From the NCBI RefSeq assembly GCF_002113885.1, contig NW_018407841.1, positions 103,996 through 167,995 on the forward strand: a stretch of 64,000 bases of DNA. Direction: 5' to 3'. A program made the position numbers and the translations under genes. Positions 27,561 through 47,990 of this stretch are shown here, piece by piece (position 1 is the first letter of the stretch; each line of letters begins with the position of its first letter). The notes beneath the pieces were generated by a model, which worked only from the letters and a program-made list of their open reading frames with translations, had not been told where the DNA came from and searched no databases. The stretch is from Mizuhopecten yessoensis (Eukaryota).

Positions 27561-28159
27561 ATGTGTGCTGACCAGGTAGACGGTGCTATAATGTCAAGAC
27601 ACAAACTTGCAGGAAAGGATAAGCCAGTACGCAACGAAACCGCTGATATCACTGACTCGGACCCGTCAGTTACAGACCAATTAGACGAATTCGACTCCTT
27701 TGTTAGACCGAGCTGCAATGATGTGACAAACAGCCAGACCGGATGTGACGACACAAACGAATTCAAACAATGCTTATGCTGCAATATCTGGGGACTTCCA
27801 GTTTTAAGACATGTTCCTGAGACGGATCACGATCGTGCGTTTGATTTGCTGGTAGCTGTAGTTTCGCTCGGTCTCTGTCTCGGTGAGGTAGGATCGGAAG
27901 TGAAGTTACTCTTGGAGTACTATATGTCGGGTGAACACCTGAGTTTTGGTCTCACCCTGGGCTTTATGCTTACCACTACTGTTATTGTTGGCATTTTCAC
28001 GCTGTTGTGGACTTTAATAGATATAAAGCAACAAAATGGACATGCAGAGGAAAATTCGGACGGGAGACAACAGTCTGTCGGGACAATCGATACTGCGTAT
28101 TTTGAAACAGGACACGACTTCAACAATATCTCAAGAATGAAACTACGTTCCAAGAAATT
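27561..28159 (+). other. Truncated XKR-B exon-1 copy in a probable assembly-duplicated segment
   Basis: 27081-28159 is near-identical to 28161-29239 (two differences seen), and the two are joined by a single N at 28160. Confidence 0.75.
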
Positions 28160-28640
28160 NATATGTAGGGTTATCACGTTTTGCTCAATATGAAATCGTC
28201 TTCGTTCGGAACGACGAAAGTTTAGCCTTTATATCACATAAAATACATTATGTATTTTTCAAAGAACAAGTGTCATTGATTATATACATATTCCCTTCAG
28301 AATGTCAATCTTCGACTGTTCTGTGATTGGTTTGCGCTATTTATGGGTCTAACTCTGTATTACATTGTTTCAAACTAGTATTCATTAATGTGTTGAAGGA
28401 TATTATATTGGTCGACAGGTTCATAGAACACAACCAGTGAAACGTTTGTATGCGACGCTCATTGTCTTCTTGTACAATTTATATCACCTATAGTGCATAT
28501 CGTGCTCTATTCACCAAAGCGTCGAACTTAGTCTTTTTACTGGTATGCTACATGGACCTGCATGCAATACATGTATATATTTACCCACGCGAATAAAATG
28601 TTGTTATTTCGAAAACTGTTACAGGAAACTTGTCAACAAG

Positions 28641-29293
28641 ATGTGTGCTGACCAGGTAGACGGTGCTATAATGTCAAGACACAAACTTGCAGGAAAGGAT
28701 AAGCCAGTACGCAACGAAACCGCTGATATCACTGACTCGGACCCGTCAGTTACAGACCAATTAGACGAATTCGACTCCTTTGTTAGACCGAGCTGCAATG
28801 ATGCGACAAACAGCCAGACCGGATGTGACGACACAAACGAATTCAAACAATGCTTATGCTGCAATATCTGGGGATTTCCAGTTTTAAGACATGTTCCTGA
28901 GACGGATCACGATCGTGCGTTTGATTTGCTGGTAGCTGTAGTTTCGCTCGGTCTCTGTCTCGGTGAGGTAGGATCGGAAGTGAAGTTACTCTTGGAGTAC
29001 TATATGTCGGGTGAACACCTGAGTTTTGGTCTCACCCTGGGCTTTATGCTTACCACTACTGTTATTGTTGGCATTTTCACGCTGTTGTGGACTTTAATAG
29101 ATATAAAGCAACAAAATGGACATGCAGAGGAAAATTCGGACGGGAGACAACAGTCTGTCGGGACAATCGATACTGCGTATTTTGAAACAGGACACGACTT
29201 CAACAATATCTCAAGAATGAAACTACGTTCCAAGAAATTACTTATAGCGTGTAGAATTATTGCTTCGTTTCTCCAGTTTGGCCGCGCCTTCCG
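28641..29293 (+). CDS. XKR-B exon 1 without its own exons 2-3 (cut by the N join at 29525)
   Basis: Intact 653-nt exon MCADQVDG...FLQFGRAFR with donor gtaagt. The intron is interrupted at the single N. Confidence 0.6.
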
Positions 29294-29617
29294 GTAAGTC
29301 GTGTGTTCTCGGAAACTGCCGTGTTGGATTGCTTACGATACCTCTCTAATCACGATATATAATACTATACAACATTTGATATAGCGCCCTATCTAGCTAA
29401 CATAAGCCACTCTGAATCGATTTACAGTACATAGATATACAGTTTATATAATTAGCATATACATTAATAAATACAAATTGTTTTGAAGAATTCTCGCAGG
29501 AGCTGCCTTGTCATGCGCTAACTTNGGTTGCTAAATAGACCTGTATGCAATATTTATTTACCCACCTGAATAAAATGTTGTTCTTTTGAAAACTGTTGCA
29601 GGAAACTTGTCAACAAG

Positions 29618-30270
29618 ATGTGTGCTGACCAGGTAGACGGTGCTATAATGTCAAGACACAAACTTGCAGGAAAGGATAAACCAGTACGCAACGAAACCGC
29701 TGATATCACTGACTTGGACCCGTCAGTTACAGACCAATTAGACGAATTCGACTCCTTTGTTAGACCGAGCTGCAATGATGCGACAAACAGCCAGACCGGA
29801 TGTGACGACACAAACGAATCCAAACAATGCTTATGCTGCAATATCTGGGGACTTCCAGTTTTAAGACATGTTCCTGAGACGGATCACGATCGTGCGTTTG
29901 ATTTGCTGGTAGCTGTAGTTTCGCTCGGTCTCTGTCTCGGTGAGGTAGGATTGGAAGTGAAGTTACTCTTGGAGTACTATATGTCGGGTGAACACCTGAG
30001 TTTTGGTCTCACCCTAGGCTTTATGCTTATCACTACTGTTATTGTTGGCATTTTCACGCTGTTGTGGACTTTGATAGATATAAAGCAACACAATGGACAT
30101 GCAGAGGAAAATTCGGACGAGCGACATCAGTCCGTTGGGGCAATCGATACTGCGTATTTTGAAACAGGACACGACTTCAACAATATCTCAAGAATGAAAC
30201 TACGTTCCAAGAAATCACTTATAGCGTGTAGAATTATTGCTTCGTTTCTCCAGTTTGGCCGCGCCTTCCG
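29618..30270 (+). CDS. XK-related protein B1, exon 1
   Basis: MCADQVDG..., TM1 LCLGEVGLEV, SFGLTLGF and FLQFGRAFR. Donor CG|gtaagt, phase 2. Confidence 0.85.
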
Positions 30271-30323
30271 GTAAGTCGGAAACTGCCGTGTTGGATTGCT
30301 TACGATACCTCTCTAATCACGAT

Positions 30324-30808
30324 ATATAATACTATACAACATTTGATATAGCGCCCTATCTAGCTTACATAAGCCACTCTGAATCGATTTACAGTACATA
30401 GATATACAGTTTATATAATTAACATATACATTAATAAATACAAATTGTTTTGAAGAATTCTCGCAGGAGCTGCCTTGTCATGCGCTAACTACTAGTCCTA
30501 TGCCTCCTGGCAAATACCTCCTTATGTGCGTATGCCTGCTTGTGTGCTGGAGATGTAATGTGTTCTGTTTGTAGTGGGACCCTGCTTTCAACGGCATCAT
30601 TTATAGTGCCACCTCACTTGAATGCTACAGCACAGATACCGCAACATCCTACCCGGACCAATTTATGCTCCACATGGGTTGTTGGAGTTGTGTGGGCAGG
30701 AGAAAAACACTTTCTCTGAATATCCATGCGTATGACGACTTCGGGGATCGAACACCGGCCGCCGCCTGTGTGGAAGGTCGGAGTGTTAAGCACTAGACCA
30801 GTCCGCCC
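30324..30808 (-). mobile_element. Full-length tRNA-derived SINE with L2/CR1-type tail in XKR-B1 intron 1
   Basis: Minus-strand head gggcggactggtctagtgc...gttcgatcccc and tail ...gggcgctatatcaaatg. Paralogous copies at 38766-39220 and 46273-46759, partial copy at 29356-29524. Confidence 0.8.
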
Positions 30809-30882
30809 ATATATATGCAATTCTAATATCAGTAATTATATGAAAATATGTAAAGGGCTACCTATACTATCTTTAATTTCAG

Positions 30883-31079
30883 CCTAGCGGAGTACATTTA
30901 CAACATGTACCAGGGATGGAAAAGTAAGAGAAAAGATGAGAAACGAATAGAAAAAGCGGAAGTGGAATTACGGGATGCCGCAATTTTGGGCCTGTTGGAG
31001 GGATACATGGAAACTGCCCCAAAGTTCCAGTTACAATTGTATCAGTGGTTTACAACTGATTTCAAAACTAGGACAAGAG
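30883..31079 (+). CDS. XK-related protein B1, exon 2
   Basis: LAEYIYNM...RDAAILGLLEGYMETAPKFQLQLY. Acceptor tttcag, donor gtttgt, same phases as XKR-A. Confidence 0.87.
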
Positions 31080-31317
31080 GTTTGTACTTGGAATAATTAC
31101 GAGAAATACAAAGCAAGTTTCTAGATACAGGAAGCCAATTAAAGTAAATAATATTTTCTTTGTCATATGACAATCGCGGAGGTAAGCTGTTGACAACAAT
31201 TTCTTGAAAAAATTATCAAATCCCGAATGCTTAGCTTCTAATTTCATTAGTAAAGTACATGTTTATCAGGAAAATGCTCTTTGTTACTCATGTTTTCGTC
31301 ATTATTTCTATTTTCAG

Positions 31318-31895
31318 ATTTGTTTTTGTTGATCTCCTTGGCATCTATATCGATCTCGGTGACCTCTTGCTACATGACGCACCGGAAGTTAAAGCAGGGG
31401 CGGAAGTCAGTGACATTTTTGGCATGGGTGTTGTACCTAGCGATGCGACTGTGTGAACTTGGGCCCCGTCTTGTCTTATTAGTGTTGTGTTTTAGGTTCG
31501 TTGGCTTGAGTACGACGCTGATAGGTGTCTTTTTCCATTTCGTGCTCATGTTCGTGCTCAATGCATATCACGTGAAGCCGGAGAACAATCAGATGTGTGA
31601 CCAACGCTGTTCGCGCTTCTTCTACATCTTCCTGAGCTACGTGGAGATCTACAGCTTCATCAACATGAATCAGGAAGAATCCAAACATACGTCACTAATC
31701 TATTACGTCATATTTTACTTGGAGAATGCTGTGATGGTGTCATTAGTGTTAGGTCTGACGTATAGCGGAATCATGCCGTGTATGACTTGGTGTATGTTCT
31801 CGTATTCAGCTATCCCAGGTTTTGTGTTACACCTACTCTTCCTGTGTCTGTACTATTCCTGTCTCCACTCGTCACGCAACAGATTAGACCACTGA
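31318..31895 (+). CDS. XK-related protein B1, exon 3 (total ~475 aa)
   Basis: MRLCELGPR, YSFIN, YYVIFYLEN, LYYSCLH, then a stop shortly after. Confidence 0.88.
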
Positions 31896-33619
31896 TCGTC
31901 TAACATATAACAGCTGTATTAAAGGAGAGAAACAAAGATTGTGTACATTCAGTTCCATGCCAAAACCCTTTTACATTGGTGTGTTCGATGATTTCATAGC
32001 AACATACTATTCGAAGTCTGTAGCTAACCTACAAACGCATTCTTCGAAAGTATTTAACACACACACGACACTGTTATACCATTGTTCAGAACTCATTTCT
32101 TACTTGTGAAACCTTTACCTCAGATTACAACTGTATCTAATTCGCGACCTCCGACAATGAAGAATAAATATACTGCCCCCATAGCAACACTTCAGACTTT
32201 TTTTTTATCTTTTCTACTTTCTCTTTCCTTTCTCCTCTCTTCCCCTTGGTGTCTTAACGATCCCTTAACGATGTGTATTTCACAAAAAATATAAAAGTAC
32301 TTTTAAGTACTAATTAATTTCACGTAAAAAGAGTAAAATGTGTATAATATGTGTCATGTCACTGCTCAAAAGTGTGACAGTGACTGACGAGGTTCAGGCC
32401 AACCTTGGGGACTGAGAAATACACCAGCAAAGACTACTAGCAGAATAACCGCGTAAACAGTATTGTATCAGACACTTGTTATTAGACTTTTGACAATGAA
32501 TATTGACGATTTTAATCACGTCCTATGTTAAACAACGATATAAATATTATGTTAATGTTTTGTCAATCCCTTTCCGGATCAAAGAAGATGCGTTCTTGGC
32601 GAGTATATAAACGTGTTGCTTTATTTATTGATTATATATCATCGTAAGTAGTACAACAATAGTTCATGTTAACCTTAAAAAAACAGCAACAAGGGAAAAA
32701 TACCGAAGTATCGACAAAATCGAATATCGAACTAATAATCGTTATAACTAGGGCAAAACATTCACAAAAGTAAGGCTGAATAGAAATTCTTGATAAACTA
32801 CCAGGAGATTAAAACAAAGTGTTCAGAAAGGCAAATCGTCCTTTGTTTGATTGATGACGATATTAATCTAAGACATATCCAAGTAATGTCACCTCATAAC
32901 TGGGGTAGTGACAACGGAACATCTTTGGAAACTCTGTGTTATAATTTTGCCACAGACCTTTGTCTATGTAAAAGCTATAATGAGTTAGTATTCTACCTGC
33001 TTATAAAACATAAGATTCTCTACTCAAGTTCCTATTCCAAACACTGAGATTTCCAGGATGAATGCGTTCTACATGCTGACTTCACGTTTCGTAACCAGGG
33101 TCTTCTATCAGAGCGTTAGTCGCAATCCTGACCTGATTGTTAAACTGTGAGATTTGAATAACTATTATGATATAATTAAAGATATGTTGAGTGGATCTGA
33201 GATAGATTATGGTTCAAATTTCATCTAGATTTGACAGCAGTCATTAGGACTGGTGACATATAAATATTATGTGGTGAGTTTATTTAATCCTCAGTGGCGT
33301 CTGTGTTTCCAATTGGTTATTCGCTGATCAAGTCCAGATTATGTTTTGTAAATGATACCTGATACGTGTGTATTTGAACTGATCATAATTGTCACAGTAA
33401 TATATTGCAAAACTTAATGTAAACAGCGATCAGAAGTAGGATTTACACGTTTCATTGTCAACTACGCTTTAATGTTAGTTTATTTTGTATGGTATGGCTG
33501 GTGAATCTTCATGGAGTTTGTGGGATACTTTATTATGGGTTCCACATGTGGCGCAGGGAACATTTAAATCACTTAGCCACAAAGTGTTTTTGTGGTTCGA
33601 CTATCTGTGGAATGTCCTA

Positions 33620-34088
33620 TTTTTTATCTCGCCGCCACGAAGTAGCGGAAGCGAGACTAAGGTGTTACTTTTCCGACGGCGTCAACGTTAAGTGTTTTGC
33701 GTTTAACTTGGTTTCACTGAAAGTATAACTAATAGACCAACCAAACTTGGACCAAAGATGCATCTTAGTTAGAACATCTGAACCCATGCATCAAATGCTG
33801 AATGCGGCCTACCTTACATGGTCCATTGACTTTTCAGCATCTCCATCAACATTAAGTTTTGAAGTTTTTGCGTTGAAGTTAGTTTCACTGAAAGTATAAG
33901 TACTAGACCAAGCAAACTGGGACCAACGATGCATCTTAGATAGTACATCTCATTTCATGCATCAAATACTGAATGCGGCCTTCCTTTCATGGACCATTGA
34001 CTTTTCAGCATCTCCATCAACATTAAGTTTTTGCGTTTAAGTTAGTTTCTCTGATATGTGCATTGATGGTCAAAGCGGGACACAGGCA
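33620..34088 (+). mobile_element. HINE/Helentron-like element in each XKR-B 3' flank (also 42013-43140 and 50105-50390)
   Basis: 5' hairpin tctcgccgccacgaagtagcggaagcgaga followed by internal tandem subunits (gaccaa.caaact.ggacc...). Two subunits here, one in the other copies. Confidence 0.55.
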
Positions 34089-35179
34089 AGACATATCAAT
34101 CTGAATGACTTGTTTATGTTGGTGTCGACGTTCTTGTTGGGATTGTGTATGATCGCTTTTGTTTATCTCGCTTTTATACAAACTTTCTTTTGAAAAACAT
34201 TTGGTGTCGTTTTTGTATGCTATGTTCTATTTCAATTTTGTGTAAACATTTCGGCCGATATTCTTTGTTGTCAATGTCATATAGCATTATTCTTCAGACA
34301 CCTGTATTGCCGTTATTGTATATTACTTTTTATCATATTTTTGGCGGACATTTCTTGGAAGATTGTGTGTTGTCGTCGTTATATATATTTTTTACTATTT
34401 TACTTTCATACACTTCCTTGTCAATGTTGTGTGCTGTCGTTTTCGCTGTGTGGCATATAAGAGAAATAACATACTTACGTCGAAAATGTGATCGGTATTT
34501 ATTTAATTTATTTATTAAATTTTTCTCGACCTTTCTGGCTACTATGTAACATTGACTGGAAGTTTACGAACGGGTGACTGATAACAATTATATGTTTATA
34601 CTGTGGTTTCTCAGTAACGTTTACAGAGGATAAAAACTTAATGATCATGACGTAATTGGAATGTTATGCCACATATTGGCATGTCTGACTTGTTCAACAC
34701 TAAAATAAAAATTGTTTGTGATTTATTTTCTTTGATCACACTGATGATAAATTTGACATGCCTGTTGTAGTAGTTGCTTTGGTGGCATTCCTGAACGACT
34801 GTGATATCCATACAAAACGATGGATGGGCTCTATGTTTTGAGGGATCAGGTCATCTCCACAAATCTTGTTTTGTCTTCTTTTATTATTTCATTTTGAATT
34901 TTGTCTAGCTAAAGCTAAATTACTGATAACAAAACAAATCAATTTTCAGCTATTTAAATATATATAAAGAAACACAATAACATTTGTAATTATGTCTTCA
35001 GGCTGAGCCAGGTTAGACATAGGTCAGGAATATTAGCTCGGGATACACTATGAAAAGCATTCCAGGGTATAACATGGAACATTGATTCGTGTCTTATTGC
35101 ACCTGGTCACATGTATCAATCTTTGTACAATGATCTATTGTTTTTAACATTTGCCAGTTTCGTTTAAATGTACTATACC

Positions 35180-37307
35180 CTACACTAGCAGGGTACTAAC
35201 AGTGCTGTCGTCTACACTTCCAGGGTATTAACAGTGATGTCGTCTACACTAGCAGGGTACTAACAGTGCTGTCGTCTACACTAGCAGGGTATTAACAGTG
35301 CTGTCGTATACACTTCCAGGGTACTAACACTGCTGTCGTCTACACTAGCAGGGTATTAACAGTGTTGTCGTCTACACTTCCAGGGTATTAACAGTGCTGT
35401 CGTCTACACTAGCAGGGTACTAACAGTGCTGTCGTCTACACTTCCAGGGTATTAACAGTGATGTCGTCTACACTAGCAGGGTATTAACAGTGCTGTCGTC
35501 TGCACTAGCAGGGTATTAACAGTGCTGTCGTCTACACTTCCATGGTATTAACAGTGCTGTCGTCTACACTTGCATGGTATTAACAGTGCTGTCGTCTACA
35601 CTTCCAGGGGATTAACAGTGCTGTCGTCTACACTAGCAGGGTAGTAACAGTGCTGTCGTATACACTTCCAGGGTACTAACACTGCTGTCGTCTACACTAG
35701 CAGGGTATTAACAGTGCGGTCGTCTACACTTCCAGTGTATTAACAGTGTTGTCGTCTACACTTCCAGGGTATCAACAGTGCTGTTGTCTACACTTCCAGG
35801 GTATTAACAGTGCTGTCGTCTACACTTCCATGGTATTAACAGTGCTGTCGTCTACACTAGCAGGGTATTAACAGTGTTGTCGTCTACACTTCCCGGGTAT
35901 TAACAGTGTTGTCGTCTACACTTCCAGGGTATCAACAGTGCTGTTGTCTACACTTCCAGGGTATTAACAGTGCCGCCGTCTACACTTCCATGGTATTAAC
36001 AGTGCTGTCGTCTACACTAGCAGGGGATTAACAGTGCTGTCGTATACACTTCCAGGGTACTAACACTGCTGTCGTCTACACTAGCAGGGTATTAACAGTG
36101 CTGTCGTATGCACTAGCAGGGTATTAACAGTGCTGTCGTCTACACTAGCAGGGTAGTAACAGTGCTGTCGTATACACTTCCAGGGTACTAACACTGCTGT
36201 CGTCTACACTAGCAGGGTATTAACAGTGCGGTCGTCTACACTTCCAGTGTATTAACAGTGTTGTCGTCTACACTTCCAGGGTATCAACAGTGCTGTTGTC
36301 TACACTTCCAGGGTATTAACAGTGCTGTCGTCTACACTAGCAGGGTATTAACAGTGCTGTCGTCTACACCCCCAGTGTATTAACAGTGTTGTCGTCTACA
36401 CTTCCAGGGTATCAACAGTGCTGTTGTCTACACTTCCAGGGTATTAACAGTGCTGTCGTCTACACTACCAGGGTATTAACAGTGCTGTCGTCTACACTAG
36501 AAGGGTATTAACAGTGCTGTCGTCTACACTAGCAGGGGATTAACAGTGCTGTCGTATACACTTCCAGGGTACTAACACTGCTGTCGTCTACACTAGCAGG
36601 GTATTAACAGTGCGGTCGTCTACACTTCCAGTGTATTAACAGTGTTGTCGTCTACACTTCCAGGGTATCAACAGTGCTGTTGTCTACACTTCCAGGGTAT
36701 TAACAGTGCTGCCGTCTACACTTCCAGGTTATTAACAGTGCTGTCGTCTACACTAGAAGGGTATTAACAGTGATGTCGTCTACACTTACAGGGTATTAAC
36801 AGTGATGTCGTCTACACTTACAGGGTATTAACAGTTAAATGTACTATACCCTACACTAGCAGGGTACTAACAGTGCTGTCGTCTGCACTAGCAGGGTATT
36901 AATAGTGCTGTCGTCTACACTAGAAGGGTATTAACAGTGATGTCGTCTACACTAGAAGGGTATTAACAGTGATGTCGTCTACACTAGAAGGGTATTAACA
37001 GTGATGTCGTCTACACTAGAAGGGTATTAACAGTGCCGCCGTCTACACTTCCATAGTATTAACAGTGCTGTTGTATACACTAGCAGGGTATTAATAGTGC
37101 TGTCGTCTACACTAGAAGGGTATTAACAGTGCGGTCGTCTACACTTCCGGGGGATTAACAGTGCTGCCATCTACACTTCCAGGGGATTAACAGTGCTGCC
37201 ATCTACACTTCCAGGGTAGTAACAATGTTGTCGTCTACCCTTCCAGGGTATTAACAGTGATGTCGTCTACACTTACAGGGTATTAACAGTGTTGTTGTCT
37301 ACACTTC
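35180..37307. repeat. Minisatellite, ~66 copies of 32 bp
   Basis: Unit cagggtattaacagtgctgtcgtctacact(tc/ag), with variants recurring in higher-order blocks. Confidence 0.95.
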
Positions 37308-37395
37308 CTATATCGATCTCGGTGACCTCTTGCTACATGACGCAACGGACATTAAAACACGGGCGGAAATCGGTGACGTTTTGGGCATGGGTGTT
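37308..37395 (+). pseudogene. 88-bp displaced copy of part of XKR-B2 exon 3
   Basis: Identical to 39890-39977. Confidence 0.9.
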
Positions 37396-38108
37396 ATAAG
37401 TTTCCCTTTAGATTTATGATACCAGTTTGGGATTTTTCATGTTTGCGAGCCACTGGCGAGTAAATGTGAAAAATCCAAATCGAGTATCATAATCTAATAT
37501 GCAGGGAAACGAATGACATATTCTTATTTTCATATAATACAAAGTAAACTGTATAAATGTGATCTGAATATTCTGCACTTGACCGACTCTGAAACGATGA
37601 AAACTGCGTCCGCTTCGCAATGACGTGACGGCATGTTGACTGTTCCTATTCGATTGGGACGTCGTCTTTATTACACTGCATTTCACGGTTCTCATATGAT
37701 AAATAGGGTTATCCCCTTTTGTTCGAGATGACACAGTCTTCGTCCGCAATGACGAAATTGTAGCCTTAATATCACATAAAATACATTACGTGTTTATCAA
37801 AGAACAAGTGTCATTGTTTGTATACATATTCCCTTCAGAATGTCAATCTTCATCTGTTCTCTGATTCGTTTGCGCTATTTATGGCTCTAACTCTGTACTA
37901 CATTGTTACAAACTAGTATTTAAAACGTATGTATGTGAAGCTTCCATGACTTCTAGTACAATATGTCTCCCCTGTAGTACATATCGTGCTTTAGCCACCA
38001 GCTTAATAATTTTACTGGGTTGCTAAATAGACCTGTATGCAATATTTATTTACCCACCTGAATTAATGTTGTTCTTTTGAAAACTGTTGCAGGAAACATG
38101 TCAACAAG

Positions 38109-38713
38109 ATGTGTGCTGACCAGGTAGACGGTGCTATAATGTCAAGACACAGACTTGCAGGAAAGGATAAGCCAGTATGTAATGAAACCGCTGATATCAC
38201 TGACTCAGTCACAGTCAAATTAGACGAATTAAACTCCCTTGTAAGACCGATCTGCAATGTTGGGACAAACACCCAAACCGGATGTGACGACACAAACGAA
38301 TCAAACGACACAGACGGATCAAAACAATGCCTATGCTGCAATTTTTGGGAACTTCCAGTTTTAAGACAAGTTCCTGAGACAGATCACGATCGTGCGTTTA
38401 ATTTGCTGATAGCTGTAGTTTCGCTCTGTCTCTGTCTCGGTGAGGTAGGATCGGAAGTGAAGTTACTCTATGAGTACTATATGTCGGGTGAACACCTGAG
38501 TTTTGGTCTCACCCTAGGCTTTATGCTTACCACTACTGTTATTGTTGGTATTTTCACGCTGTTGTGGACTTTAATAGATATAAGGCAACACAATGGACAT
38601 GCAGAGGAAAATTCGGACGGGAGACAACAGTCTGTCGGGGCAATCGATACTGCGAAATCACTTATAGTGTGTAGAATTATTGCCTCGTTTCTCCAGTTTG
38701 GCCGCGCCTTCCG
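38109..38713 (+). CDS. XK-related protein B2, exon 1
   Basis: Paralog of B1 exon 1, 605 nt, donor gtaagt. Confidence 0.87.
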
Positions 38714-39299
38714 GTAAGTCGGAAACTGCCGTGTTGGATTGCTTACGATACCTCTCTAATCACGATATATAATAATATACAACATTTGATATAGCGCCCT
38801 ATCTAGCTAACATAAGTCACTCTGAATCGCTTTATAGTACATAGATAGACAATTTATATAATTAGCATATATATTAATAAATTCAATGTGTTTTGAGGAA
38901 TTCTCACAGGAGCTGCCTTATCAGACAAATATCTCTCTATGTGTGTATGCCTGCGTGTGTGCTGGAGATGTAATGTGTTCTTTTTGTAGTGGGACCGTGC
39001 ATCAAGGCATCATTTATAGTATCACTTCACTTGAATGCTACATCACAGATATCGTAACATCCACCCCAGACCAATTTAAAACTCCACCTGGGTCGTTGGA
39101 GTTGTGTGGGAAGGAGAAAAACACTTTCTCTGAATATCCATGCTTACGACGACTTCGGGGATCAAACCCCGGCCGCCTGCGTGGAAGGCCGGAGTGTTAA
39201 CCACTCGACCAATCCGCCTCTATATATACAATTCTAATATCAATATCAGTAATTCTATGAAAATATGTTAAAGGTTACTTATACTATCTATTATTTCAG

Positions 39300-39496
39300 T
39301 CTAGCGGAGTACATTTACAACATGTATCAGGCATGGAAATGTAATAGAAAAGATGAGAAACGAATAGAAAAAGCGGAAGTGAAATTACGGGATGCCTCGA
39401 TTTTGGGCCTGTTGGAGGGATACATGGAAACTGCTCTTAAGTTCCAGTTACAATTATACCTGATGTTTGCAACTGATGCTACAACTAAGACAAGAG
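39300..39496 (+). CDS. XK-related protein B2, exon 2
   Basis: 197 nt, GYMETALKFQLQLY, AG/GT boundaries. Confidence 0.87.
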
Positions 39497-39543
39497 GTAT
39501 GTACATGGAATAATAACGAGAAATATAAAGTTAGTAAACACTT

Positions 39544-39624
39544 ACAATCTGATTATAATCATCCGTTAGGCTTCGTTAACTTCGTACTACGGAGCCATGT
39601 AACAGGTGATTCTAATCAGATTGT
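39544..39624. mobile_element. Palindromic MITE with 8-bp TSD in B2 intron 2 (longer copy at 47077-47176 in B3)
   Basis: aaacactt|acaatctgatt...aatcagattgt|aaacactt. Confidence 0.7.
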
Positions 39625-39862
39625 AAACACTTAATTAACCATTTTCTCGATTCAGGAATCCATACAAAATAAATATTTTATTGTATCGTATGACTACGAA
39701 GGGGTAATCTGTTGATATAATACTAAGTGAGTTGTGATTCATTAATTTCTTGAAAATGAATCACAATCCGAATGTTGGTCTTCTAAATTCATTAATAAAG
39801 TATAGGTTTATCAGGAAATTGCTCTTTGTAACACATGTTTTCCTTATTATTTCCATTTTCAG

Positions 39863-40440
39863 ATTTGTTTTTGTTGATCTCCTTGGCATCTATATCGATC
39901 TCGGTGACCTCTTGCTACATGACGCAACGGACATTAAAACACGGGCGGAAATCGGTGACGTTTTGGGCATGGGTGTTGTATCTATTGATGCGACTGTGTG
40001 AACTTGGGCCTCGCTTTGTGTTATTAGTGTTGTGTGTTAAGTTCGTTGGCTGGTGGACGACGCTGATAGGTGTCTTTTTCCATTTCGTGCTAATGTTCGT
40101 GCTCAATTTATGTCACGTGAAGCCGGAGAACAATCAGATGTGTGACCAACGCTGTTTGCTCTTCTTCTACCTTTTCCTCAGCTACGTGGAGATCTACAGC
40201 TTCATCAACATGAACGAGGAAAAATCCAAACATACGTCACTAATCTATTACGTCATATTTTACTTGGAGAATGCTGTGATGATGTCATTAGTGTTAGGTC
40301 TGACGTATAGCGGAATCATGCCATGTATGACTTGGTGTATGTTCTCGTATTCAGCTATCCCAGGTTTTGCGTTACATTTATTCTTCTTGTGTCTCTACTA
40401 TTCCTGTCTCCACTCGACACGCAACAGATCAGACCACTGA
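39863..40440 (+). CDS. XK-related protein B2, exon 3 (total ~459 aa)
   Basis: 578 nt, open frame, XK motifs as in B1. Confidence 0.88.
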
Positions 40441-42094
40441 TTGTCTTACATATTACAGCTGTATTAAATGAAAGAAACGAAGATTGTGTTCATTTAATTT
40501 AATGCCAAAACCCTTTTACATTGGTGTTTTCATAGCAACATAACATTCAAAGTCTGTAGCTAACCTTGACGCATTCTTCGAAAGTATTTAACACACACAC
40601 GACACTGCTATACCATAGTTCTTACTTGTGAAACCTTTACCCCAGATTACAACTGTATCCAATTCGCGACCTCCGACAATGAAGAATAAATATACTGCCC
40701 CCATAGCAAAACTTCAAATTTTTTTCATCTTTTCTACTCTCTCTTTCCTTTCTCCTCTCTTCCCCTTGGTGTCTTAACGATCCCTTAACGACGTGTATTT
40801 CACAAAAATTATATAAGTACTTTTAAGTACTAATTAATTTCACGTAAAAAGAGAAAAGTGTGAATATTATGTACCATGTCACTGCTCAAAATTGTGACAG
40901 TGACTGACGAGGTTCAGGTCAACCTTGGGGACTGAGAAATGCACCAGCAAAGACTACTAGCAGAATAACCGCGTAAACAGTATTGTATCAGACACTTGTT
41001 GATAGACTTTTGACAATGAATATTGACGATTTTAATCACGTCCTATGTTAAACAACGATATAAATATTATGTTAATGTCTACAGTCAATCCATTTCCTGA
41101 TCAAAGAAGATGCGTTCTTGGCGAGTATATAAACTTGTTGCTTTATTTATTGATTATATATCATCGTAAGTAGTACAACAATAGTTCATGTTAACCTTAA
41201 AAAAAACAGCAACAAGGGAAAAATACCGAAGTATCGACAAAATCTAATATCGAACTAATAATCGTTATAACTAGGGCAAAACATTCACAAAAGTAAGGCT
41301 GAATAGAAATTCTTGAAAAACTACCAGGAGATTAAAACAAAGTGTTCAGAAAGGCAAATCGTCCTTTGTTTGATTGATGACGATATTAATCTAAGACATA
41401 TCCAAGTAATGTCACCTCATAACTGGGGTAGTGACAACGGAACATCTTTGGAAACTCTGTGTTATAATTTTGCCACAGACCTTTGTCTATGTAAAAGCTA
41501 TAATGAGTTAGTATTCTACCTGCTTATAAAACATAAGATTCTCTACTCAAGTTCCTATTCCAAACACAGAGCGTTACCAATCTACACTGGAAATAATAAG
41601 TCGCAATCCTGACCTGATTTTTAAACTATGGGATTTGAATAACTATTATGATATAATTAAAGATATGTTGAGTGGATCTGAGATAGATTATGGCTCAAAT
41701 TTCATCTAGATTTGACAGCAGTCATTAGGATCAAGTCAAGATTACGTTTTGTAAATTATACCTGCTACGTGTGTATTTGAACAGATCATAATTGTCACTG
41801 TAATATATCGCAAAACTTAATGTAAACAGCGATCAGAAGTAGGATTTACACGTTTCTTTGTCAACCATGCTTTAATGTTAGTTTATTTTGTATGGTATGG
41901 TCGGTAAGTCTTCATGGAATTGGTTGGAGTCGTTATTATGGGTACCACATGTGGCGCAGGGAACACTTAAATCACCAAGCTGCATAGTGTTTTGGTGTCT
42001 CGACGTCCTAATGTTTGTCTCGCCGCCACGAAGTAGCGGAAGCGAGAATAAGGTGTTGCTTTTCCGACGGCGGAGGCGGCGTCAACATTAAGTT

Positions 42095-42909
42095 CAATTT
42101 CAATTTCAACAGATTTTATTGACTTTATATATGTCAATTGGATTGGACATCAGGCTAGGCCTATTAAAGTCCTTTCCAAACTTATTTGCAAACATTACAT
42201 ATATTCTGTCGTAACAATCTAATTTAGCTTGTGAAATGAACATTTTTCTACTATTATTCAATCATTTTTTGTTTACGTTTTGGATATTACCAATTAAATA
42301 AATCACGTATATTTGTTGACAACCCATCCTACATACATTCTAAGGGATACAGGCCCTGTGTATAAACACATTGGCCATCCATCTACTGGATATATAGGAT
42401 AAGTTACCAAGAAATAAACATTTTGTCAAATTTCAGAATATGATATGGCTCCATAAAGGAAAATATAGTTATTATTATCTATTATTGGAGTTGATTCTCT
42501 TAAAATTTAGTTAACAAAACACTTTAGAATATTCATGTAACTATGAAATAGTTAGAACAGGTTATAGAGTCGTACACTCATAAATTACATCCAGTCAACC
42601 GAATACCAGAGATGTTGTGAAGACAGATGTACAAAATGTATATACACCAGTATCAATACTTATTAGCAGAGTGATGATGACACTATAAATAATAGCATCA
42701 CTTTCAATGTAAAGTTTAGCTGTTAGTGAGATTACATACCAAGTCTATTAGTTTAACAAATATAGTCAGATATACAGATAAAATGGATCAGTGCTGCATA
42801 TTAAGCATCCATTTTTTTTTTTTTTAGATAAAAATGATCATGATTATCAGTTATATCAAATTGAGAGATTTGTATTACTAATTGCATTCTAATGTTAATA
42901 AAGAGTTGG
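42095..42909 (-). mobile_element. Retroposed insertion with LINE-type 3' end, unique to the B2 unit
   Basis: 9-bp TSD cattaagtt. Minus strand ends AATAAA followed by (ttgaaa)n. The site is empty in the B1 and B3 units. Confidence 0.75.
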
Positions 42910-45626
42910 CATTAAGTTATTTGCTCTTAGCTTAGTTTCATTGAAATTAAAAGTGCTAGACCAACCAAACTTGGACCAAAGATGCATCTTAGTTAGTACA
43001 TCTCAACCCATGCATCAAATACTGAATTCGACCTACCTTTCATGTTCCATTGACTTTTCAGCATCTCCATCAACATTTAGTTTTTGCGTTTAAGTTAGTT
43101 TCTCTGATATGTGCATTGATGGTCAAAGCGGGGCACAGGTGATGCATATCAATCAAATGGCTTGTTTGTTTCGACGTTCTTGTCGGGATTGTGTATGATT
43201 GCTTTTGTTTATCTCGCTTTTGTGCAAACTTTCTTTTGAAAAACATTTGGTGTCGTTGTTGTATGCTATTTTCTATTTCAATTTTGTGTAAACATTTCGG
43301 CCGATATTCTTTGTTGTCAATGCTATATGTCATTATTCTTAAGACACCTGTATTGCCGTTATTGTATATTATTTTTGTTCTATTTTTGGCGGTCTTTCAT
43401 TGGAAGATTGTGTGTTGTCGTCGTTATATATATTTTTTACTATTTTACTTTTATACACTTCCTTGTCAATGTTGTGTTGTCGTTTTCGCTGTGTGGCATA
43501 TAAGAGAAATAACATACTTACGTTGAGAATGTGATCGGTATTTGTTATGTAAATATTTATTAACTTTTTCTCGACCTTTCTGGCTACTATGTAACATTGA
43601 CTAGAAGTTTACGAACGGTTGACTGATAACAATTATATGTTTATACTGCGGTTTCTCAGCAACGTTTACCGACGATAAAAACGTAATGAACATGACGTAA
43701 TTGGAATGTTATGCCATATATGGGCATGTCTGACTTGTTCAGCACTGAACATATATTCGTTTGTGATTTTATTTCTTTCATAACACTTATGGTAAATTTA
43801 ACTTTCGTTGCTTTGGTGTCCTAAACAGTTGTGGTATTCACACAATACAATTGATGAGCTCTACGTTTTGAGTATTCTGGTCGTTTCCTCAGTTCTTGTT
43901 TTTGTCTGCTTTTATCAATTTTCATTTTGTATTTTGCCAAGCTTAAACTGAAATACTAATAACAAAACAATTAATTTTCAGCTGGGTAAATATATCTTAA
44001 TGTATATGTATATGTAACGAAACACAATACCATTTTTAATAATATCTTCAGGGTGAACCAGGTTAGCCATAAGATCAGGTCAGGAACACACACCTGACAC
44101 ACCATTTTCCTGGGTATAACATGGATAACGTACACGTTTACGTGGAAATACTCATTCATTCGTAACCTATTGCACCTTATATATATTCAACGACAAACCT
44201 ATATACACCGTCACGCTGCGATAGTCACGGTATATAGGTTTTGTACGTGTGTACGTGTGACAATACAGGAAGATATTTGTAATGATAACACCCTACACTA
44301 AGTACATATTACTGTTACACTGTATTTTCATACATTCGAGCACTTGTCTACCTTGTTATTACTCTTTTGGTCACACAGAACATTACATGCCAATATCTTG
44401 TTTGACCATCATCTAAACATACAGGCTGTTAAAGCAGTTCCAGTAGTATAGATCACAGCAGGTGACTGCAGAACTTGAGGACATCACATGCTAAGACAGG
44501 ACAGAGTAACAAACTGTAAGAATATCTTGCACCAGAATCAGAATCAGAATCTGAAGGCCAGGTTGAATACCATCCCCATGGGGGGGGGGATGGTTTTGAA
44601 AGAACTTTTAAAAGAGGAAGCCAGCTTTGTCAAGAAAAGCAGCAAAGTTTCTCCGAAATAACTGCGAAACACGTGGGTTTTGTACGGTTACTCCGGTTTC
44701 TTCCCACAGTAAGACGTCCGCGCGCTAACATTCGGGCCAACAAGAGTGATAATTAAAAGTTGTAAAAAATGTCAGATACATGGTACAAAAAATAAACGAA
44801 TACGTGTATGTTACATGAAGCTAACAACAGTTAAAAACTAGGACGTGTGACCGAGACACAACCATTATATATTGTCTGACGCATCGAAAATAGCGGCAAT
44901 CTTCACACACAGTTTAGAAATCCGATACTCGGAATTGAATTTTTCTTACGGACTCCCTAAATAGTTCCGCATTGTTAGGTAACCTATATATGTTCAAGCA
45001 CTTTTACAAACATGACAAAACAACATAATCTGGAGCACGACATTCTAGGAAAGGCTTATCTATTTCAATGAAGAGAACCTGTGTAAATAACAAATTTGCA
45101 TATGTCTATTGAGTAATCGTCCGACATACCTAGGTAAACATAAACATGATGATGTAGCGGGTATATTTTAATATATCTTCAAACACATTTTGGAAATCCG
45201 GTTCTCGGAATTGTTGTTCACCTACCCACTCCTTGAATAGTTCTGCATAATTAAGGAACATATAAATGCCCAAGCACTTCATGATTTTTACGGACATTGC
45301 AAAAGTCTTCAAACCACAGCACAAGTCGCATAAACGTAAGAGAATGTTTTTTTTTTTTTTACCTTGTTAAGAATATTTACTACTTTAAGCTTTGTTTTTG
45401 TAACTTTGTTCATTTCTTTTTATCTCATTCATTACAATTTGTATACTGCACATACAATTTTTCAATGTTCCTTTTCAGATACGTTTTTTATAACCTGTAA
45501 TACATATCGTGCTTCAGTCACCAAAGCGTCGAACTTTATAATGAACCTGTATACAATATATATTCACCCACCTGAATAAAATGTAGTTTTATTTCGAAAA
45601 ACAGTTGCAGAAAACCTATCAACAAA

Positions 45627-46210
45627 ATGTGTGCTGACCAAGTAGATGGTGCTATACTGTACAGATACAAACCTGCAGGAAAGGATAAACCAGTACGTGA
45701 CGAAACTTACTCAGCCACAGACCAATTCGACTCACCTGTTAGACCGATCTGCAATGATGGGACAAACAGCCAAACCGGATGTGACGACACAAACGAATCA
45801 AACGACACAAACGGATCAAAACAATGCCTATGCTGCAATTTCTGGGGACTTCCAGTTTTAAGACAAGTTCCTGAGACGGATCACGATCGTGCGTTTGATT
45901 TGCTGGTAGCTGTTGTTTCCCTCTTTCTCTGCCTCGGTGAGGTAGGATCGGAAGTGAAGTTACTCTTGGAGTACTATATGTCGGGTGAACACCTGAGTTT
46001 TGGTCTCACCCTAGGCTCTATGCTTACCACTACTGTTATTGTTGGTATTTTCACACTGTTGTGGACTTTAATAGATATAAGGCAACAAAACGGACCTACA
46101 GTACAAAATTCGGACGGGAGACAACAGTCTGTCGGGGCAATCGATACTGCGAAATCACTTATAGTGTGTAGAATTATTGCCTCGTTTCTCCATTTTGGCC
46201 GCGCCTTCCG
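45627..46210 (+). CDS. XK-related protein B3, exon 1
   Basis: Paralog, 584 nt, donor gtaagt. Confidence 0.87.
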
Positions 46211-46832
46211 GTAAGTTGCGTGTTCTCGGAAACTGCCGTGTTGGATTGCTTACGATACCTCTCTAATCACGATATACAATACTATACAACATTTGATATA
46301 TCGCCCTATCTAGCTAACATAAGCCACTCTGAATCGCTTTACAGTACATATATAGACAATTTATATAATTAGCATATATATTAATAAATACAATTTGTTT
46401 TGAGGAATTCTCACAGGAGCTGCCTTAGTAGGCGCTAACTACTAGTCCTATGCCACCTGGCAAATGACTCCCTATGTGCGTATGCCTGCGTGTGTGCTGG
46501 AGATGTAATGTGTTCTGTTTGTAGTGGGACCGTGCTTTCAACGGCATCATTTATAGTGCCACCTCACTTGAATGCTACAGCACAGATATCGCAACATCCT
46601 ACCCAGACCAATTTATACTCCACCTGGGTTGTTGGAGTTGTGTGGGAAGGAGAAAAACACTTTCTCTGAATATCCATGCGTACGATGACTTCGGGGATCG
46701 AACCCCGGCCGCCGTCTGCGTGGAAGGCCGGAGTGTTAACCACTCGACCAATCCGCCTCTATATATGTAATTCTAATATCAGTAATTATATAAAAATATG
46801 TAAAGGGTTACCTATACTATCTTAAATTTCAG

Positions 46833-47029
46833 CCTAGCTGAGTACATTTACAACATATATCAGGGATGGAAGAGTAAGAGAAAAGATGAGAAACGAATAG
46901 AAAAAGCGGAAGTGGAATTACGGGATGCCTCAATTTTGGGCCTGTTGGAGGGATACATGGAAACTGCCCCAAACTTCCAGTTACAATTGTACCTGATGTT
47001 TGCAACTGATGCTAAAACTAAGACAAGAG
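46833..47029 (+). CDS. XK-related protein B3, exon 2
   Basis: 197 nt, GYMETAPNFQLQLY, AG/GT boundaries. Not in the ORF track because it has no early Met. Confidence 0.87.
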
Positions 47030-47415
47030 GTATGTACATGGAATAATAACAAGAAATACAAAGTCAGTAAACACTTGCAATCTGATTAAAATCATTCGTT
47101 AGGCTTCGTTAACTTCGTACTACGCCTGAACGATGTTCAAGCGGAGCCCTGTAACTGTTGATTTTAATCAGATTGTAAACACTTGATTAATCCGTTTCTC
47201 GATTCAAGAATCCATACAAAGTAAATATTTTATTGTATCTTATGACTACGGAGGGGATAAACTGTTGATGTAATACTAAGTGAGTTGTGATTCATCAATT
47301 TCTTGAAAACGAATCACAACCTGAATGCTGGTCTACTAAATTCATTTGTAAAGTATAGGTTTATCAGGATAATGCTCTTTGTAACACATGTTTTCCTTAT
47401 TATTTCTATTTTCAG

Positions 47416-47990
47416 CTTTGTTTTTGTTGATCTCCTTGGCATCTATATCGATCTCGGTGACATCTTGCTATATGATGCACCGGAAGTTGAAACGGGGGCG
47501 GAAGTCGGTGACGTTTCTTGCATGGGTGGTATATCTAGTGATGCGACAGTGTGAACTTGGGCCCCGTCTTGTCTTATTAGTGTTGTGTTTAAAGTTCGTT
47601 GGCTGGTGGACGCTGATAGGTGTCTTTTGCCATCTCATGCTTATGTTCGTGCTAAATGTATGTCACGTGAAACCGGAGAACAATCAGGTGTGTGACCAAC
47701 GCTGTTTGCACTTCTTCTACCTCTTCCTCAGCTACGTCGAGATCTACAGCTTCATCAACATGAACAAGGAAGAATCCAAACATACGTCACTAATCTATTA
47801 CGTCATATTTTACTTGGAGAACGCTGTGATGATGTCATTAGTGTTAGGTCTGACGTATAGCGGAATCATGCCGTGTATGACTTGGTGTATGTTCTCGTAT
47901 TCAGCTATCCCAGGTTTTGTGTTACACCTACTCTTCCTGTGTCTGTACTATTCCTATCTCCACTCGACACGCAACAGATCAGACCACTGA
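47416..47990 (+). CDS. XK-related protein B3, exon 3 (total ~451 aa)
   Basis: 575 nt, open frame, XK motifs. Confidence 0.88.

What the first reader, a model, noticed from the sequence alone, without database searches (positions are those of the whole stretch)
28641..47990. Tail-less XKR paralogs carry a conserved N-terminal DQVDG caspase-type site
Seen: every B copy starts MCADQVDG. Further DxxD-S/G-like sites follow (DITDS, DEFDS, DQFDS, NDTDG) in an otherwise indel-rich N-terminus, and the proteins stop ~8 residues after the last YY..H motif. Established, from memory: vertebrate XKR8/4/9 scramblases are activated by caspase cleavage in a C-terminal tail (human XKR8 site recalled as DQVD/G), whereas C. 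elegans CED-8 is cleaved near its N-terminus. Inference: a lineage-specific expansion of scramblase-like proteins controlled from the N-terminus, next to a parent-like gene (XKR-A) that keeps a long C-tail.
Basis: partly seen in the sequence, partly recalled or inferred. Interest (0 to 1): 0.7.

Follow-up and report, generated by a model that had tools for sequence, protein, structure and literature searches.

The report
Scallop scramblase genes with N-terminal caspase site
Three tandem scallop genes of the XK-related lipid-scramblase family start with the same caspase-type site (DQVD|GA) that switches on human XKR8, but at the N-terminus; the motif is conserved across scallops and other bivalves, so it is probably a real control element, though untested.

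Summary
The window is Mizuhopecten yessoensis. It holds one long-tailed XK-related gene (A), three complete three-exon paralogs (B1-B3) and two extra exon-1 copies next to assembly gaps. All five B exon-1 copies start MCADQVDG, and the proteins end 8 residues after the YY..H motif.

The motif is not chance:
- Pecten maximus and Argopecten irradians orthologs keep D-x-V-D-G-x-[IL]-[LM]-S-R, with synonymous codon changes.
- P4-P2' is identical to the human XKR8 site in PDB chain 7dce_X.
- A matrix built only from non-scallop bivalve XKRs (D-x-V-D-G-A-L-F-S-R-I, sometimes repeated) ranks the scallop N-termini first.
- DxxDG is about 6-fold enriched, and DxVDG about 50-fold, in N-extensions of 92 family representatives.

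- Short C-termini are the norm in this bivalve clade. A's long tail is the exception.
- A carries its own N-terminal DVPD motif.
- The further DxxD sites are not positionally conserved.

Best reading: CED-8-like N-terminal caspase control, confidence 0.55. Cleavage would remove only 5-7 residues and expose a glycine that fits the N-myristoylation pattern, a speculative new twist. No cleavage or activity was tested. The mRNA 5' end in this species remains unmapped.

The parts
13748..14379 (+). XKR-A exon 1 (residues 1-211 of the 589-aa public model P0011). It includes the N-terminal RDVPDTGLQR motif at about 13778-13807.
   Evidence: ORF; Pfam PF09815; donor CAG|GTGGGT; tblastn of P0011
15308..15514 (+). 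XKR-A exon 2
   Evidence: tblastn of P0011, 100% identity
20465..21373 (+). XKR-A exon 3 with a C-tail of about 120 residues (start approximate)
   Evidence: ORF; Pfam; tblastn; tail length
27561..28159 (+). Bx1: extra copy of B exon 1, cut by a single-N gap at 28160
   Evidence: 100% identical to Bx2 over the compared 300 nt
28641..29293 (+). Bx2: extra copy of B exon 1 with an intact donor. GenBank model OWF45373 (P0006) uses it as its first exon.
29618..30270 (+). B1 exon 1. MCADQVDG occupies codons 1-8; DQVDG is 29627-29641.
30883..31079 (+). B1 exon 2
31318..31895 (+). B1 exon 3, ending ...HSSRNRLDH plus stop
38109..38713 (+). B2 exon 1 (DQVDG at 38118-38132). The ORF is intact, although RefSeq XP_021363908 starts only at an internal Met.
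39300..39496 (+). B2 exon 2
39863..40440 (+). B2 exon 3
45627..46210 (+). B3 exon 1 (DQVDG at 45636-45650)
   Evidence: the joint leaves at 46210 in contigs of two runs
46833..47029 (+). B3 exon 2
   Evidence: joints 46210>46834 and 47029>47417
47416..47990 (+). B3 exon 3, ending ...HSTRNRSDH plus stop

Best explanation
B1-B3 are expressed, tandemly duplicated members of the XK-related (XKR) family of putative phospholipid scramblases in the Yesso scallop. Each encodes a confident XKR transmembrane core. The core is preceded by a disordered cytosolic N-extension of about 90 residues and followed by almost no C-tail. The extension is capped by a conserved short linear motif, M-x-x-D-x-V-D|G-A-I-[LM]-S-R. 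This motif is orthologous in three scallop genera and homologous to the N-terminal 'D-x-V-D-G-A-L-F-S-R-I' motif of other bivalve XKRs. The most likely function is an executioner-caspase cleavage site that couples the protein to apoptosis from the N-terminus, as in C. elegans CED-8, rather than from the C-terminus as in vertebrate XKR4/8/9. Cleavage would remove only a 5-7-residue cap. The relevant consequence is therefore more likely a new glycine N-terminus than the loss of a bulky inhibitory domain. Shown here: family membership, fold, splicing, motif conservation and enrichment, and identity to the human XKR8 site. Inferred: cleavage, activation and scramblase activity.
For: - Family: Pfam PF09815 matches on exons 1 and 3. 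The AF2 model has pTM 0.80, and the top Foldseek hits are XKR4, XKR8 and XKR9.
- Expression and splicing: contigs of runs X1 and X2 and raw RNA reads of X24 skip 46210>46834 and 47029>47417.
- Orthologs: Pecten MSFDQVDGAILSR, Argopecten MSFDAVDGILLSR. D4, V6, D7, G8 and R13 are invariant, while Q5, D7, G8 and S12 show synonymous codon changes.
- Human XKR8 (7dce_X) reads DQVDGA at its C-terminal site, identical from P4 to P2'. Rat XKR9 reads DEPDG.
- Residues 1-88 are predicted disordered (pLDDT 40-51), so the site should be accessible.
- Family-wide enrichment in 92 representatives: N-extension DxxDG 22 against 3.7 expected, DxVDG 10 against 0.2, C-tail DxxDG 8 against 1.7. Control patterns and the XK core were not enriched.
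- A matrix trained only on non-scallop motif instances ranks scallop B N-termini first (14.3-20.3 bits; best of 2310 shuffles 13.2).
- Other lineages also carry the site at the extreme N-terminus: MDDVD|GALFSR with an upstream in-frame stop (L005) and MDMPD|GALFSR.
- Precedent: CED-8 is cleaved N-terminally and XKR4/8/9 C-terminally (PMC12334663).
Against: - No biochemical evidence exists for any mollusc XKR.
- Removing 7 residues is not an obvious way to relieve inhibition, and AF2 does not dock the cap on the core.
- Purified CED-8 and XKR4 scramble lipids without cleavage (PMC12334663), so how cleavage matters is open even for the models.
- The conserved block extends past the caspase consensus (G-A-[IL]-x-S-R). 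In one relative (P0030) two of three motif repeats lack the P1 Asp (DDVN-G, DHIY-G), which suggests a function of the motif beyond cleavage.
- The 5' end of the M. yessoensis mRNA was not mapped. A possible acceptor (TGCAG|G) lies 16 nt before the ATG.
- Argopecten transcripts allow an in-frame start 11 codons further upstream.
- B-type proteins have Glu at two near-invariant TM1 Asp positions, so their activity may differ from that of characterised XKRs.
Confidence: 0.55

Rival explanations
1. The conserved N-terminal block is a short linear motif with a non-caspase function, such as a sorting or trafficking signal (its D-x-x-[IL]-[LMF] part resembles an acidic di-hydrophobic motif) or a partner- or membrane-binding peptide. 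Under this reading the match to the caspase consensus is incidental.
For: Conservation extends to G-A-[IL]-[LMF]-[ST]-R-[IV], beyond what caspases need. In P0030 two of three repeats keep GALF[ST]R but lack the P1 Asp. Purified CED-8 does not need cleavage for activity in vitro.
Against: P4 Asp, P1 Asp and P1' Gly are the most invariant positions. DxxDG and DxVDG as such are 6- to 50-fold enriched in XKR termini that lack the GALFSR part, while DxxD followed by K, R, E or P is depleted. The site is identical to a proven caspase site in human XKR8. In scallops the hydrophobic pair varies (IM, IL, LL) and lacks the aromatic residue needed for an LIR-type reading.
Confidence: 0.25
2. The site is cleaved, but cleavage switches the protein off or marks it for removal rather than activating scrambling. 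For example, the exposed N-terminal glycine could act as a degron.
For: Cleavage leaves an N-terminal Gly. B3 has Tyr where the myristoylation pattern needs a small residue, so an unmodified Gly end is conceivable. B-type proteins have diverged strongly (stem branch 1.08, D-to-E changes in TM1).
Against: All characterised caspase-cleaved XKRs are activated in cells by cleavage. There are no data on Gly-degron pathways in molluscs.
Confidence: 0.1
3. The motif is a chance match in an acidic, fast-evolving N-terminus or in a mis-annotated 5' region, and has no function.
For: The linker is Asp/Glu-rich (15-21%), and other DxxD sites there come and go. The TSS is unmapped.
Against: The motif is conserved in three genera with synonymous changes. 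The cross-lineage matrix test exceeds all 2310 shuffles. The enrichment tests gave 0 of 500 shuffles. B1-B3 and Pecten have in-frame stops upstream with no intervening ATG.
Confidence: 0.03

Closest known systems
C. elegans CED-8 (XK-related scramblase cleaved by CED-3 near its N-terminus)
   Same: XKR core with a cytosolic N-extension and a short C-terminus. The caspase-type site lies in the N-terminal region, and cleavage removes a short peptide (21 residues in CED-8; PMC12334663).
   Different: In scallop B the site sits at residues 4-8, so only 7 residues would be lost. It is fused to a conserved G-A-[IL]-x-S-R block shared with other bivalves. CED-8's own site sequence could not be compared here because the papers were not held. 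No orthology to CED-8 was shown.
Human XKR8 (and rat XKR9), caspase-3/7-activated apoptotic scramblases
   Same: Same fold (Foldseek probability 1.00; TM-score normalised to the target 0.75-0.81). Identical cleavage hexapeptide DQVD|GA. Most family-invariant charged and polar residues are kept.
   Different: In XKR8/9 the site lies about 10 residues after YY..LHP at the C-terminus, and cleavage removes a helix or peptide that packs on the cytosolic face. Scallop B has no C-tail, and its N-terminal cap is not predicted to pack. B has Glu at the positions of XKR8 D26 and D30.
Vertebrate XKR4/6/7 subfamily (source of the database names 'XK-related protein 6-like / 7-like')
   Same: XKR4 is the best sequence and structure match among solved structures (9boj; E 8e-16; TM-score normalised to the target 0.85). 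XKR4 also has an N-extension of about 100 residues.
   Different: In the tree the vertebrate-like XKR6/7 representatives fall in the other major clade. XKR4 is cleaved far out in a long C-tail, losing 86 residues. The '6-like' names are automatic and are not orthology statements.
Caspase-dependent post-translational N-myristoylation (BID, huntingtin, BFSP1 and others)
   Same: Asp|Gly cleavage exposes a glycine in a G-x-x-x-[ST] context. B1, B2, Pecten, Argopecten and the GALFSR relatives fit G-{EDRKHPFYW}-x-x-[STAGCN]-{P}. The process is established in human cells (PMC4200515, PMC9880554, PMC10297038).
   Different: It has never been reported for an XKR protein in the held library. B3 (GAILYR) does not fit. 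The pattern is permissive (about 20% of random hexapeptides starting with G, my estimate). Nothing was tested.

Membership tests
XK-related protein family (Pfam PF09815) | Match to the family HMM above the curated cut-off | tested here: met
   B exon 1 scores 41.6 bits and exon 3 72.7 bits; A exon 1 scores 52.6 and exon 3 94.4 bits; the cut-off is 24.8. Public full-length models carry PF09815.
XK-related protein family (Pfam PF09815) | XKR fold (two-repeat helical membrane domain) | tested here: met
   AF2 pTM 0.80 with core pLDDT above 90. Foldseek finds XKR4 9boj, XKR8 7dce/8xej and XKR9 7p14/7p16 at E 2.6e-9 to 1.6e-7; the next hit has E 0.44.
XK-related protein family (Pfam PF09815) | Family-invariant charged and polar residues of the membrane core | tested here: inconclusive
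   R218, E261, Q269, R306, R334, H357, N399, Y413, E419, Y463 and H467 are kept. The two near-invariant TM1 Asp (60 and 58 of 64 sequences) are Glu in all four scallop B sequences and nowhere else.
XK-related protein family (Pfam PF09815) | Phospholipid scrambling activity | not testable with these tools
   Needs liposome or cell assays.
Caspase-regulated XKR scramblases (XKR4/8/9, CED-8) | DxxD|[GSA] site in a cytosolic terminal region | tested here: met
   DQVD|G at residues 4-8 of all B copies, identical to the XKR8 site.
Caspase-regulated XKR scramblases (XKR4/8/9, CED-8) | Site conserved in orthologs | tested here: met
   Pecten has DQVDG and Argopecten DAVDG, with synonymous changes at conserved residues. 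The motif is homologous in other bivalve XKRs.
Caspase-regulated XKR scramblases (XKR4/8/9, CED-8) | Site lies in an accessible, unstructured segment | tested here: met
   Residues 1-88 have pLDDT 40-51 and no secondary structure.
Caspase-regulated XKR scramblases (XKR4/8/9, CED-8) | Cleavage removes an element that packs on or occludes the cytosolic face (XKR8/9 type) | tested here: inconclusive
   Only 7 residues would be removed, and the model gives no confident packing of residues 1-13 (block mean pLDDT about 51). A low-confidence model cannot exclude packing.
Caspase-regulated XKR scramblases (XKR4/8/9, CED-8) | Actual cleavage by an executioner caspase and cleavage-dependent PS exposure | not testable with these tools
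   Needs a protease assay and cell assays.
Post-translationally N-myristoylated caspase substrates | Gly at P1' followed by G-{EDRKHPFYW}-x-x-[STAGCN]-{P} | tested here: met
   The pattern fits GAIMSR (Bx, B1, B2), GAILSR (Pecten), GILLSR (Argopecten) and GALFSR, GAQFSR, GAIFTR in relatives. It does not fit B3 (GAILYR). Overall 13 of 26 N-terminal sites fit against 1 of 8 C-tail sites, and the cases are not independent.
Post-translationally N-myristoylated caspase substrates | Myristate attached by NMT after cleavage | not testable with these tools
   Needs metabolic labelling or mass spectrometry.

The most novel reading that the evidence does not exclude
In a bivalve clade of XKR proteins, the extreme N-terminus is a 5-7-residue caspase-removable cap (M-x-x-D-x-V-D) placed directly on a cryptic N-myristoylation signal (G-A-[LI]-[FLM]-[ST]-R). 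Apoptotic caspase cleavage would then lipidate the N-terminal extension and tether it to the membrane. That would switch the scramblase by a lipid anchor rather than by removal of an inhibitory tail, a mode of XKR control not described so far.
Probability: 0.18. Interest if true: 0.8.

Novelty: new variant of a known kind. Interest (0 to 1): 0.55.

Why it matters
How caspase cleavage turns XKR scramblases on is unresolved. Purified CED-8 and XKR4 scramble lipids without cleavage, and XKR8 and XKR9 show no conformational change after it (PMC12334663, PMC8298096). A family branch in which the caspase site sits only 4-8 residues from the N-terminus is informative. It is conserved across distant bivalves, sometimes repeated, and always followed by the same G-A-L-F-S-R block. 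This arrangement argues that what matters is the new N-terminus, not the removed piece. That gives a concrete and cheap set of experiments: D-to-A, G-to-A and cap-deleted constructs in XKR8-null cells, plus myristate labelling. The work also shows that N-terminal against C-terminal placement of the site is clade-specific across the family. It corrects database models for these scallop genes. If the motif proves not to be cleaved, it is still an undescribed conserved motif of invertebrate XKRs.

Tried and rejected
- Mapping the 5' end with reads (window 42100-48050, four runs). The introns were confirmed, but coverage over exon 1 and upstream was only 1-8x, with no joint or loose end at the candidate acceptor. 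The transcription start therefore stays open. High-copy repeats dominate the depth at 42.9-43.3 kb, 44.7-44.9 kb and 46.3-46.9 kb.
- Word-based protein searches found B-type proteins only in Mizuhopecten, Pecten and Argopecten.
- Suzuki 2014 and Chen 2013 were not held. The XKR8 site was checked instead from the PDB chain sequence. CED-8's site sequence could not be checked.
- AF2 was used to see whether the N-terminal cap docks on the core. The result was low confidence and uninformative.
- Alternative motif readings were considered and set aside for scallop B. An LIR (F-x-x-I) fits the GALFSRI relatives, but scallop B has no aromatic residue. A FFAT-like reading has the acidic and aromatic register not conserved. 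A DxxLL-type sorting signal is kept only as part of the rival explanation.
- The upstream ORF MLHGPAC... before MCADQVDG exists only in Bx1 and Bx2. B1-B3 and Pecten have in-frame stops, so it was rejected as coding.
Exons were used by reference, and the public models P0005, P0006 and P0011, which equal the spliced products exon by exon, were used for full-length work.
- The organisms behind the Logan transcripts P0020, P0026, P0028, P0030 and P0041 could not be named. They nest among named bivalves.
Full report
**What is in the window**

The window is Mizuhopecten yessoensis. Public proteins of that species are reproduced exon by exon: OWF45374/XP_021363909, OWF45373 and XP_021363908 on scaffold NEDP02004514.1.

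- XKR-A has three exons at 13748-14379, about 15308-15514 and about 20465-21373. It equals the 589-aa model P0011.
- Downstream lie three complete three-exon paralogs:
  - B1: 29618-30270, 30883-31079, 31318-31895.
  - B2: 38109-38713, 39300-39496, 39863-40440.
  - B3: 45627-46210, 46833-47029, 47416-47990.
- The intron phases are the same as in A (phase 2, then phase 1).
- Two further exon-1 copies, Bx1 (27561-28159) and Bx2 (28641-29293), sit in tandem before B1 at 1080- and 977-bp spacing. They are 97-100% identical and flanked by single-N gaps.
- Bx1 and Bx2 may be real alternative first exons or haplotype/assembly artefacts. The GenBank model OWF45373 joins Bx2's exon 1 to B1's exons 2-3.

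Full-length work used the public models by id.

**Check of the observation**

All five exon-1 ORFs start MCADQVDG. The proteins end LHS[ST]RNRxDH, 8 residues after the H of the last YY..H motif.

Expression and splicing are real. Contigs of two runs and raw polyA reads skip 46210>46834 and 47029>47417. One 1058-nt contig spans all three exons of a paralog.

The 5' end was not resolved because coverage there is 1-8x. A plausible acceptor (TGCAG|G) lies 16 nt before the ATG.

Several lines of evidence support the start codon:
- B1-B3 have in-frame stops 13-14 codons upstream with no ATG between. Pecten has one 22 codons upstream.
- Among Mizuhopecten paralogs, Pecten and Argopecten, codons for D4, V6, D7, G8 and R13 encode invariant residues.
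- Q5, D7, G8 and S12 show synonymous differences (CAG/CAA, GAC/GAT, GGT/GGC/GGG, TCA/TCG), the signature of a translated, constrained peptide.
- Argopecten transcripts permit an in-frame start 11 codons further up (MCYKPHMMSND-MSFDAVDG), bounded by a stop. This would leave the site N-terminal all the same.

**Family and fold**

- Pfam XK-related (PF09815) is matched by both large exons of A and B.
- An AF2 model of the 475-aa B protein, built on a 64-sequence alignment, has pTM 0.80 and core pLDDT above 90. Residues 1-88 are disordered.
- Foldseek returns only XKR4, XKR8 and XKR9 as significant matches. The best sequence matches among solved structures are XKR4 and XKR9.
- Nearly all family-invariant polar residues are kept.
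- The two near-invariant TM1 aspartates, which correspond to D26 and D30 of XKR8 in the 'DLGTD' motif, are glutamates in all four scallop B sequences and in no other of 64 sequences. The NSMB paper includes D26 and D30 in its alanine mutant panel; the passages I read do not give the result for them.

**Is the motif conserved?**

- The Pecten maximus ortholog (XP_033737429) starts MSFDQVDGAILSR.
- Argopecten irradians proteins and two independent transcript contigs read MSFDAVDGILLSR.
- The block M-x-x-D-x-V-D-G-x-[IL]-[LM]-[SY]-R is an island of conservation before an indel-rich acidic linker.
- The exhaustive profile search found the B type as a single 50%-identity cluster (888 bits). The next hit, at 212 bits, is gene A. 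B proteins are therefore so far confined to scallops.
- Pecten has a single B gene within +-10 kb, so the triplication is specific to Mizuhopecten or close kin.

**The motif is older than scallops**

Among the distant hits, several proteins carry the same block near the N-terminus:
- LDEVDGALFSRIS and LDDCDGAQFSRIN (P0028).
- FDDVDGAIFTRY (P0041).
- MDMPDGALFSRV (P0026).
- Three repeats in P0030: FDDVNGALFSRV, DHIYGALFTRI and CDNVDGALFSRI.
- P0020, called from a GTG, really starts MDDVDGALFSRI at an ATG 9 nt upstream, with an in-frame stop before it.

A position matrix trained only on these non-scallop instances ranks the scallop B N-termini as the seven best hits among all other N-extensions (14.3-20.3 bits). 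The best of 2310 shuffled extensions scored 13.2.

In a tree of 95 XK domains, a fully supported 21-protein clade contains two groups. One holds the B type, the A type and two further sequences (one from Pinctada, one an unnamed transcriptome assembly). Its sister group holds unionid, Mya and Mactra proteins plus the GALFSR-bearing transcripts. Every named member is a bivalve.

The A type has a weaker version at the same place: RDVPDTGLQR here, RDVADGGLQR in Ylistrum and RDVPDVGMCR in a third species.

**Caspase-site character**

- The human XKR8 chain 7dce_X reads ...LHPSCCWKPDPDQVDGARS, and rat XKR9 reads ...QHDEPDGK.
- A preprint mutates two XKR8 aspartates three residues apart (D350A/D353A in its numbering), the spacing of the two Asp in DQVD, to block cleavage.
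- CED-8 loses its first 21 residues to CED-3, whereas XKR4/8/9 are cut C-terminally (PMC12334663).
- Across 92 representatives, DxxDG occurs 22 times in N-extensions against 3.7 expected, and DxVDG 10 times against 0.2. In C-tails DxxDG occurs 8 times against 1.7.
- ExxEG, the reversed GDxxD, and DxxD followed by K, R, E or P are not enriched, and the membrane core shows nothing.
- N-terminal sites are concentrated in the clade that holds the scallops. C-terminal sites occur only in the other major clade.

The B motif is thus one instance of a family-wide, clade-specific feature.

1. Short C-termini are the rule in this bivalve clade. Tails are 0-31 residues in every member of the 21-protein clade except the A type, which has 110-128. 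The long tail of A is more likely the derived state.
2. A's tail has no DxxD[GSAT], while A's N-extension has DVPD|T, DVGD|S and DVSD|A. Nothing indicates C-terminal control of A.
3. The further B sites (DITDS, DEFDS, DQFDS, NDTDG) fall in a linker that is deleted in Pecten and different in Argopecten. They are only marginally above shuffle expectation.

**Mechanism**

The best-supported reading is CED-8-like N-terminal caspase control of a putative scramblase. What is unusual is that cleavage would remove only 5-7 residues in scallop B, P0020 and P0026. AF2 gives no sign that this cap packs on the core.

The residue block that follows, G-A-[LI]-[FLM]-[ST]-R, fits the permissive N-myristoylation pattern in B1, B2, Pecten, Argopecten and all GALFSR relatives, though not in B3. 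Overall 13 of 26 N-terminal sites fit against 1 of 8 C-tail sites, and the cases are not independent.

Caspase-dependent myristoylation is established for other proteins. The held literature does not link it to XKRs. I rate this only as the most novel reading that is not excluded.

Against a pure caspase reading, two of the three repeats in P0030 lack the P1 Asp. The block may therefore also bind something in its own right.

**Verdict**

It is wrong on polarity and on the specialness of the missing tail and the extra sites.

I class this as a new variant of a known kind. No cleavage, lipidation or scrambling was or could be tested here.

Noticed in passing
window 13778-13807 (XKR-A residues 11-20): XKR-A carries its own N-terminal DxxD motif, RDVPDTGLQR. 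The Ylistrum ortholog has RDVADGGLQR and a third bivalve RDVPDVGMCR. It lies at the same relative place as the B motif. A's 120-residue C-tail has no DxxD[GSAT].
   Followed up: partly
window 29942-29956 (B1 codons 109-113); same codons in B2 and B3: All scallop B proteins read G-E-V-G-S-E where 58-60 of 64 XKR sequences have D-x-G-T-D (XKR8 D26 and D30). The Asp-to-Glu pair is unique to the B clade.
   Followed up: partly
window 27465-30274: Two extra copies of B exon 1 (Bx1, Bx2) lie at 1080- and 977-bp spacing, beside single-N gaps at 28160 and 29525. GenBank OWF45373 splices Bx2's exon 1 to B1's exons 2-3 and skips B1's own exon 1. They could be real alternative first exons or an assembly or haplotype artefact. 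Only Bx1 and Bx2 have an open upstream ORF (MLHGPAC...).
   Followed up: partly
window 38109-38713: RefSeq XP_021363908 (B2, 'XK-related protein 7-like', 335 aa) starts at an internal Met inside exon 1, although the full exon-1 ORF with MCADQVDG is intact. The model is probably N-terminally truncated.
   Followed up: partly
window 35180-37308: A 32-bp tandem array of 66 copies (87% matches) lies between B1 and B2, about 800 bp upstream of the B2 start. It is absent from the homologous position upstream of B3.
   Followed up: no
window 46279-46875 (B3 intron 1), 42896-43293, 44687-44885: Segments with very high depth in RNA runs and many rearranged joints and loose ends. They look like high-copy transcribed repeats or transposon fragments, and the first sits inside B intron 1 in all copies.
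   Followed up: no
window 29840-29905 (B1 residues about 75-96): A B-specific conserved box, W-G-[LF]-P-[VI]-L-[RK]-x-V-P-E-[ST]-D-H-D-R-A-F-D, lies directly before TM1. It is invariant in the three scallop genera and not seen in A or other relatives.
   Followed up: no
L005:42-50 (transcript encoding P0020): The gene caller started P0020 at a GTG. An ATG 9 nt upstream, preceded by an in-frame stop, gives MDDVDGALFSRI, which places a DDVD|G site at residues 2-6.
   Followed up: yes
P0030 residues 42-93 and P0028 residues 19-54: The D-x-V-D-G-A-L-F-S-R-I block is repeated three and two times respectively. In P0030 two repeats have N or Y instead of the P1 Asp, which hints that the GALFSR part has a role of its own.
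   Followed up: partly
window 61738-63108: A long ORF carries teneurin-type EGF, DSL and EGF domains, followed by a Thr/Ser/Pro-rich mucin-like stretch. It is probably one exon of a larger gene.
   Followed up: no
window 23009-23443 and 8947-9856: A 54-bp tandem repeat (8 copies, 96% matches) lies at 23009-23443. At 8947-9856 a longer periodic array stays open in several frames.
   Followed up: no
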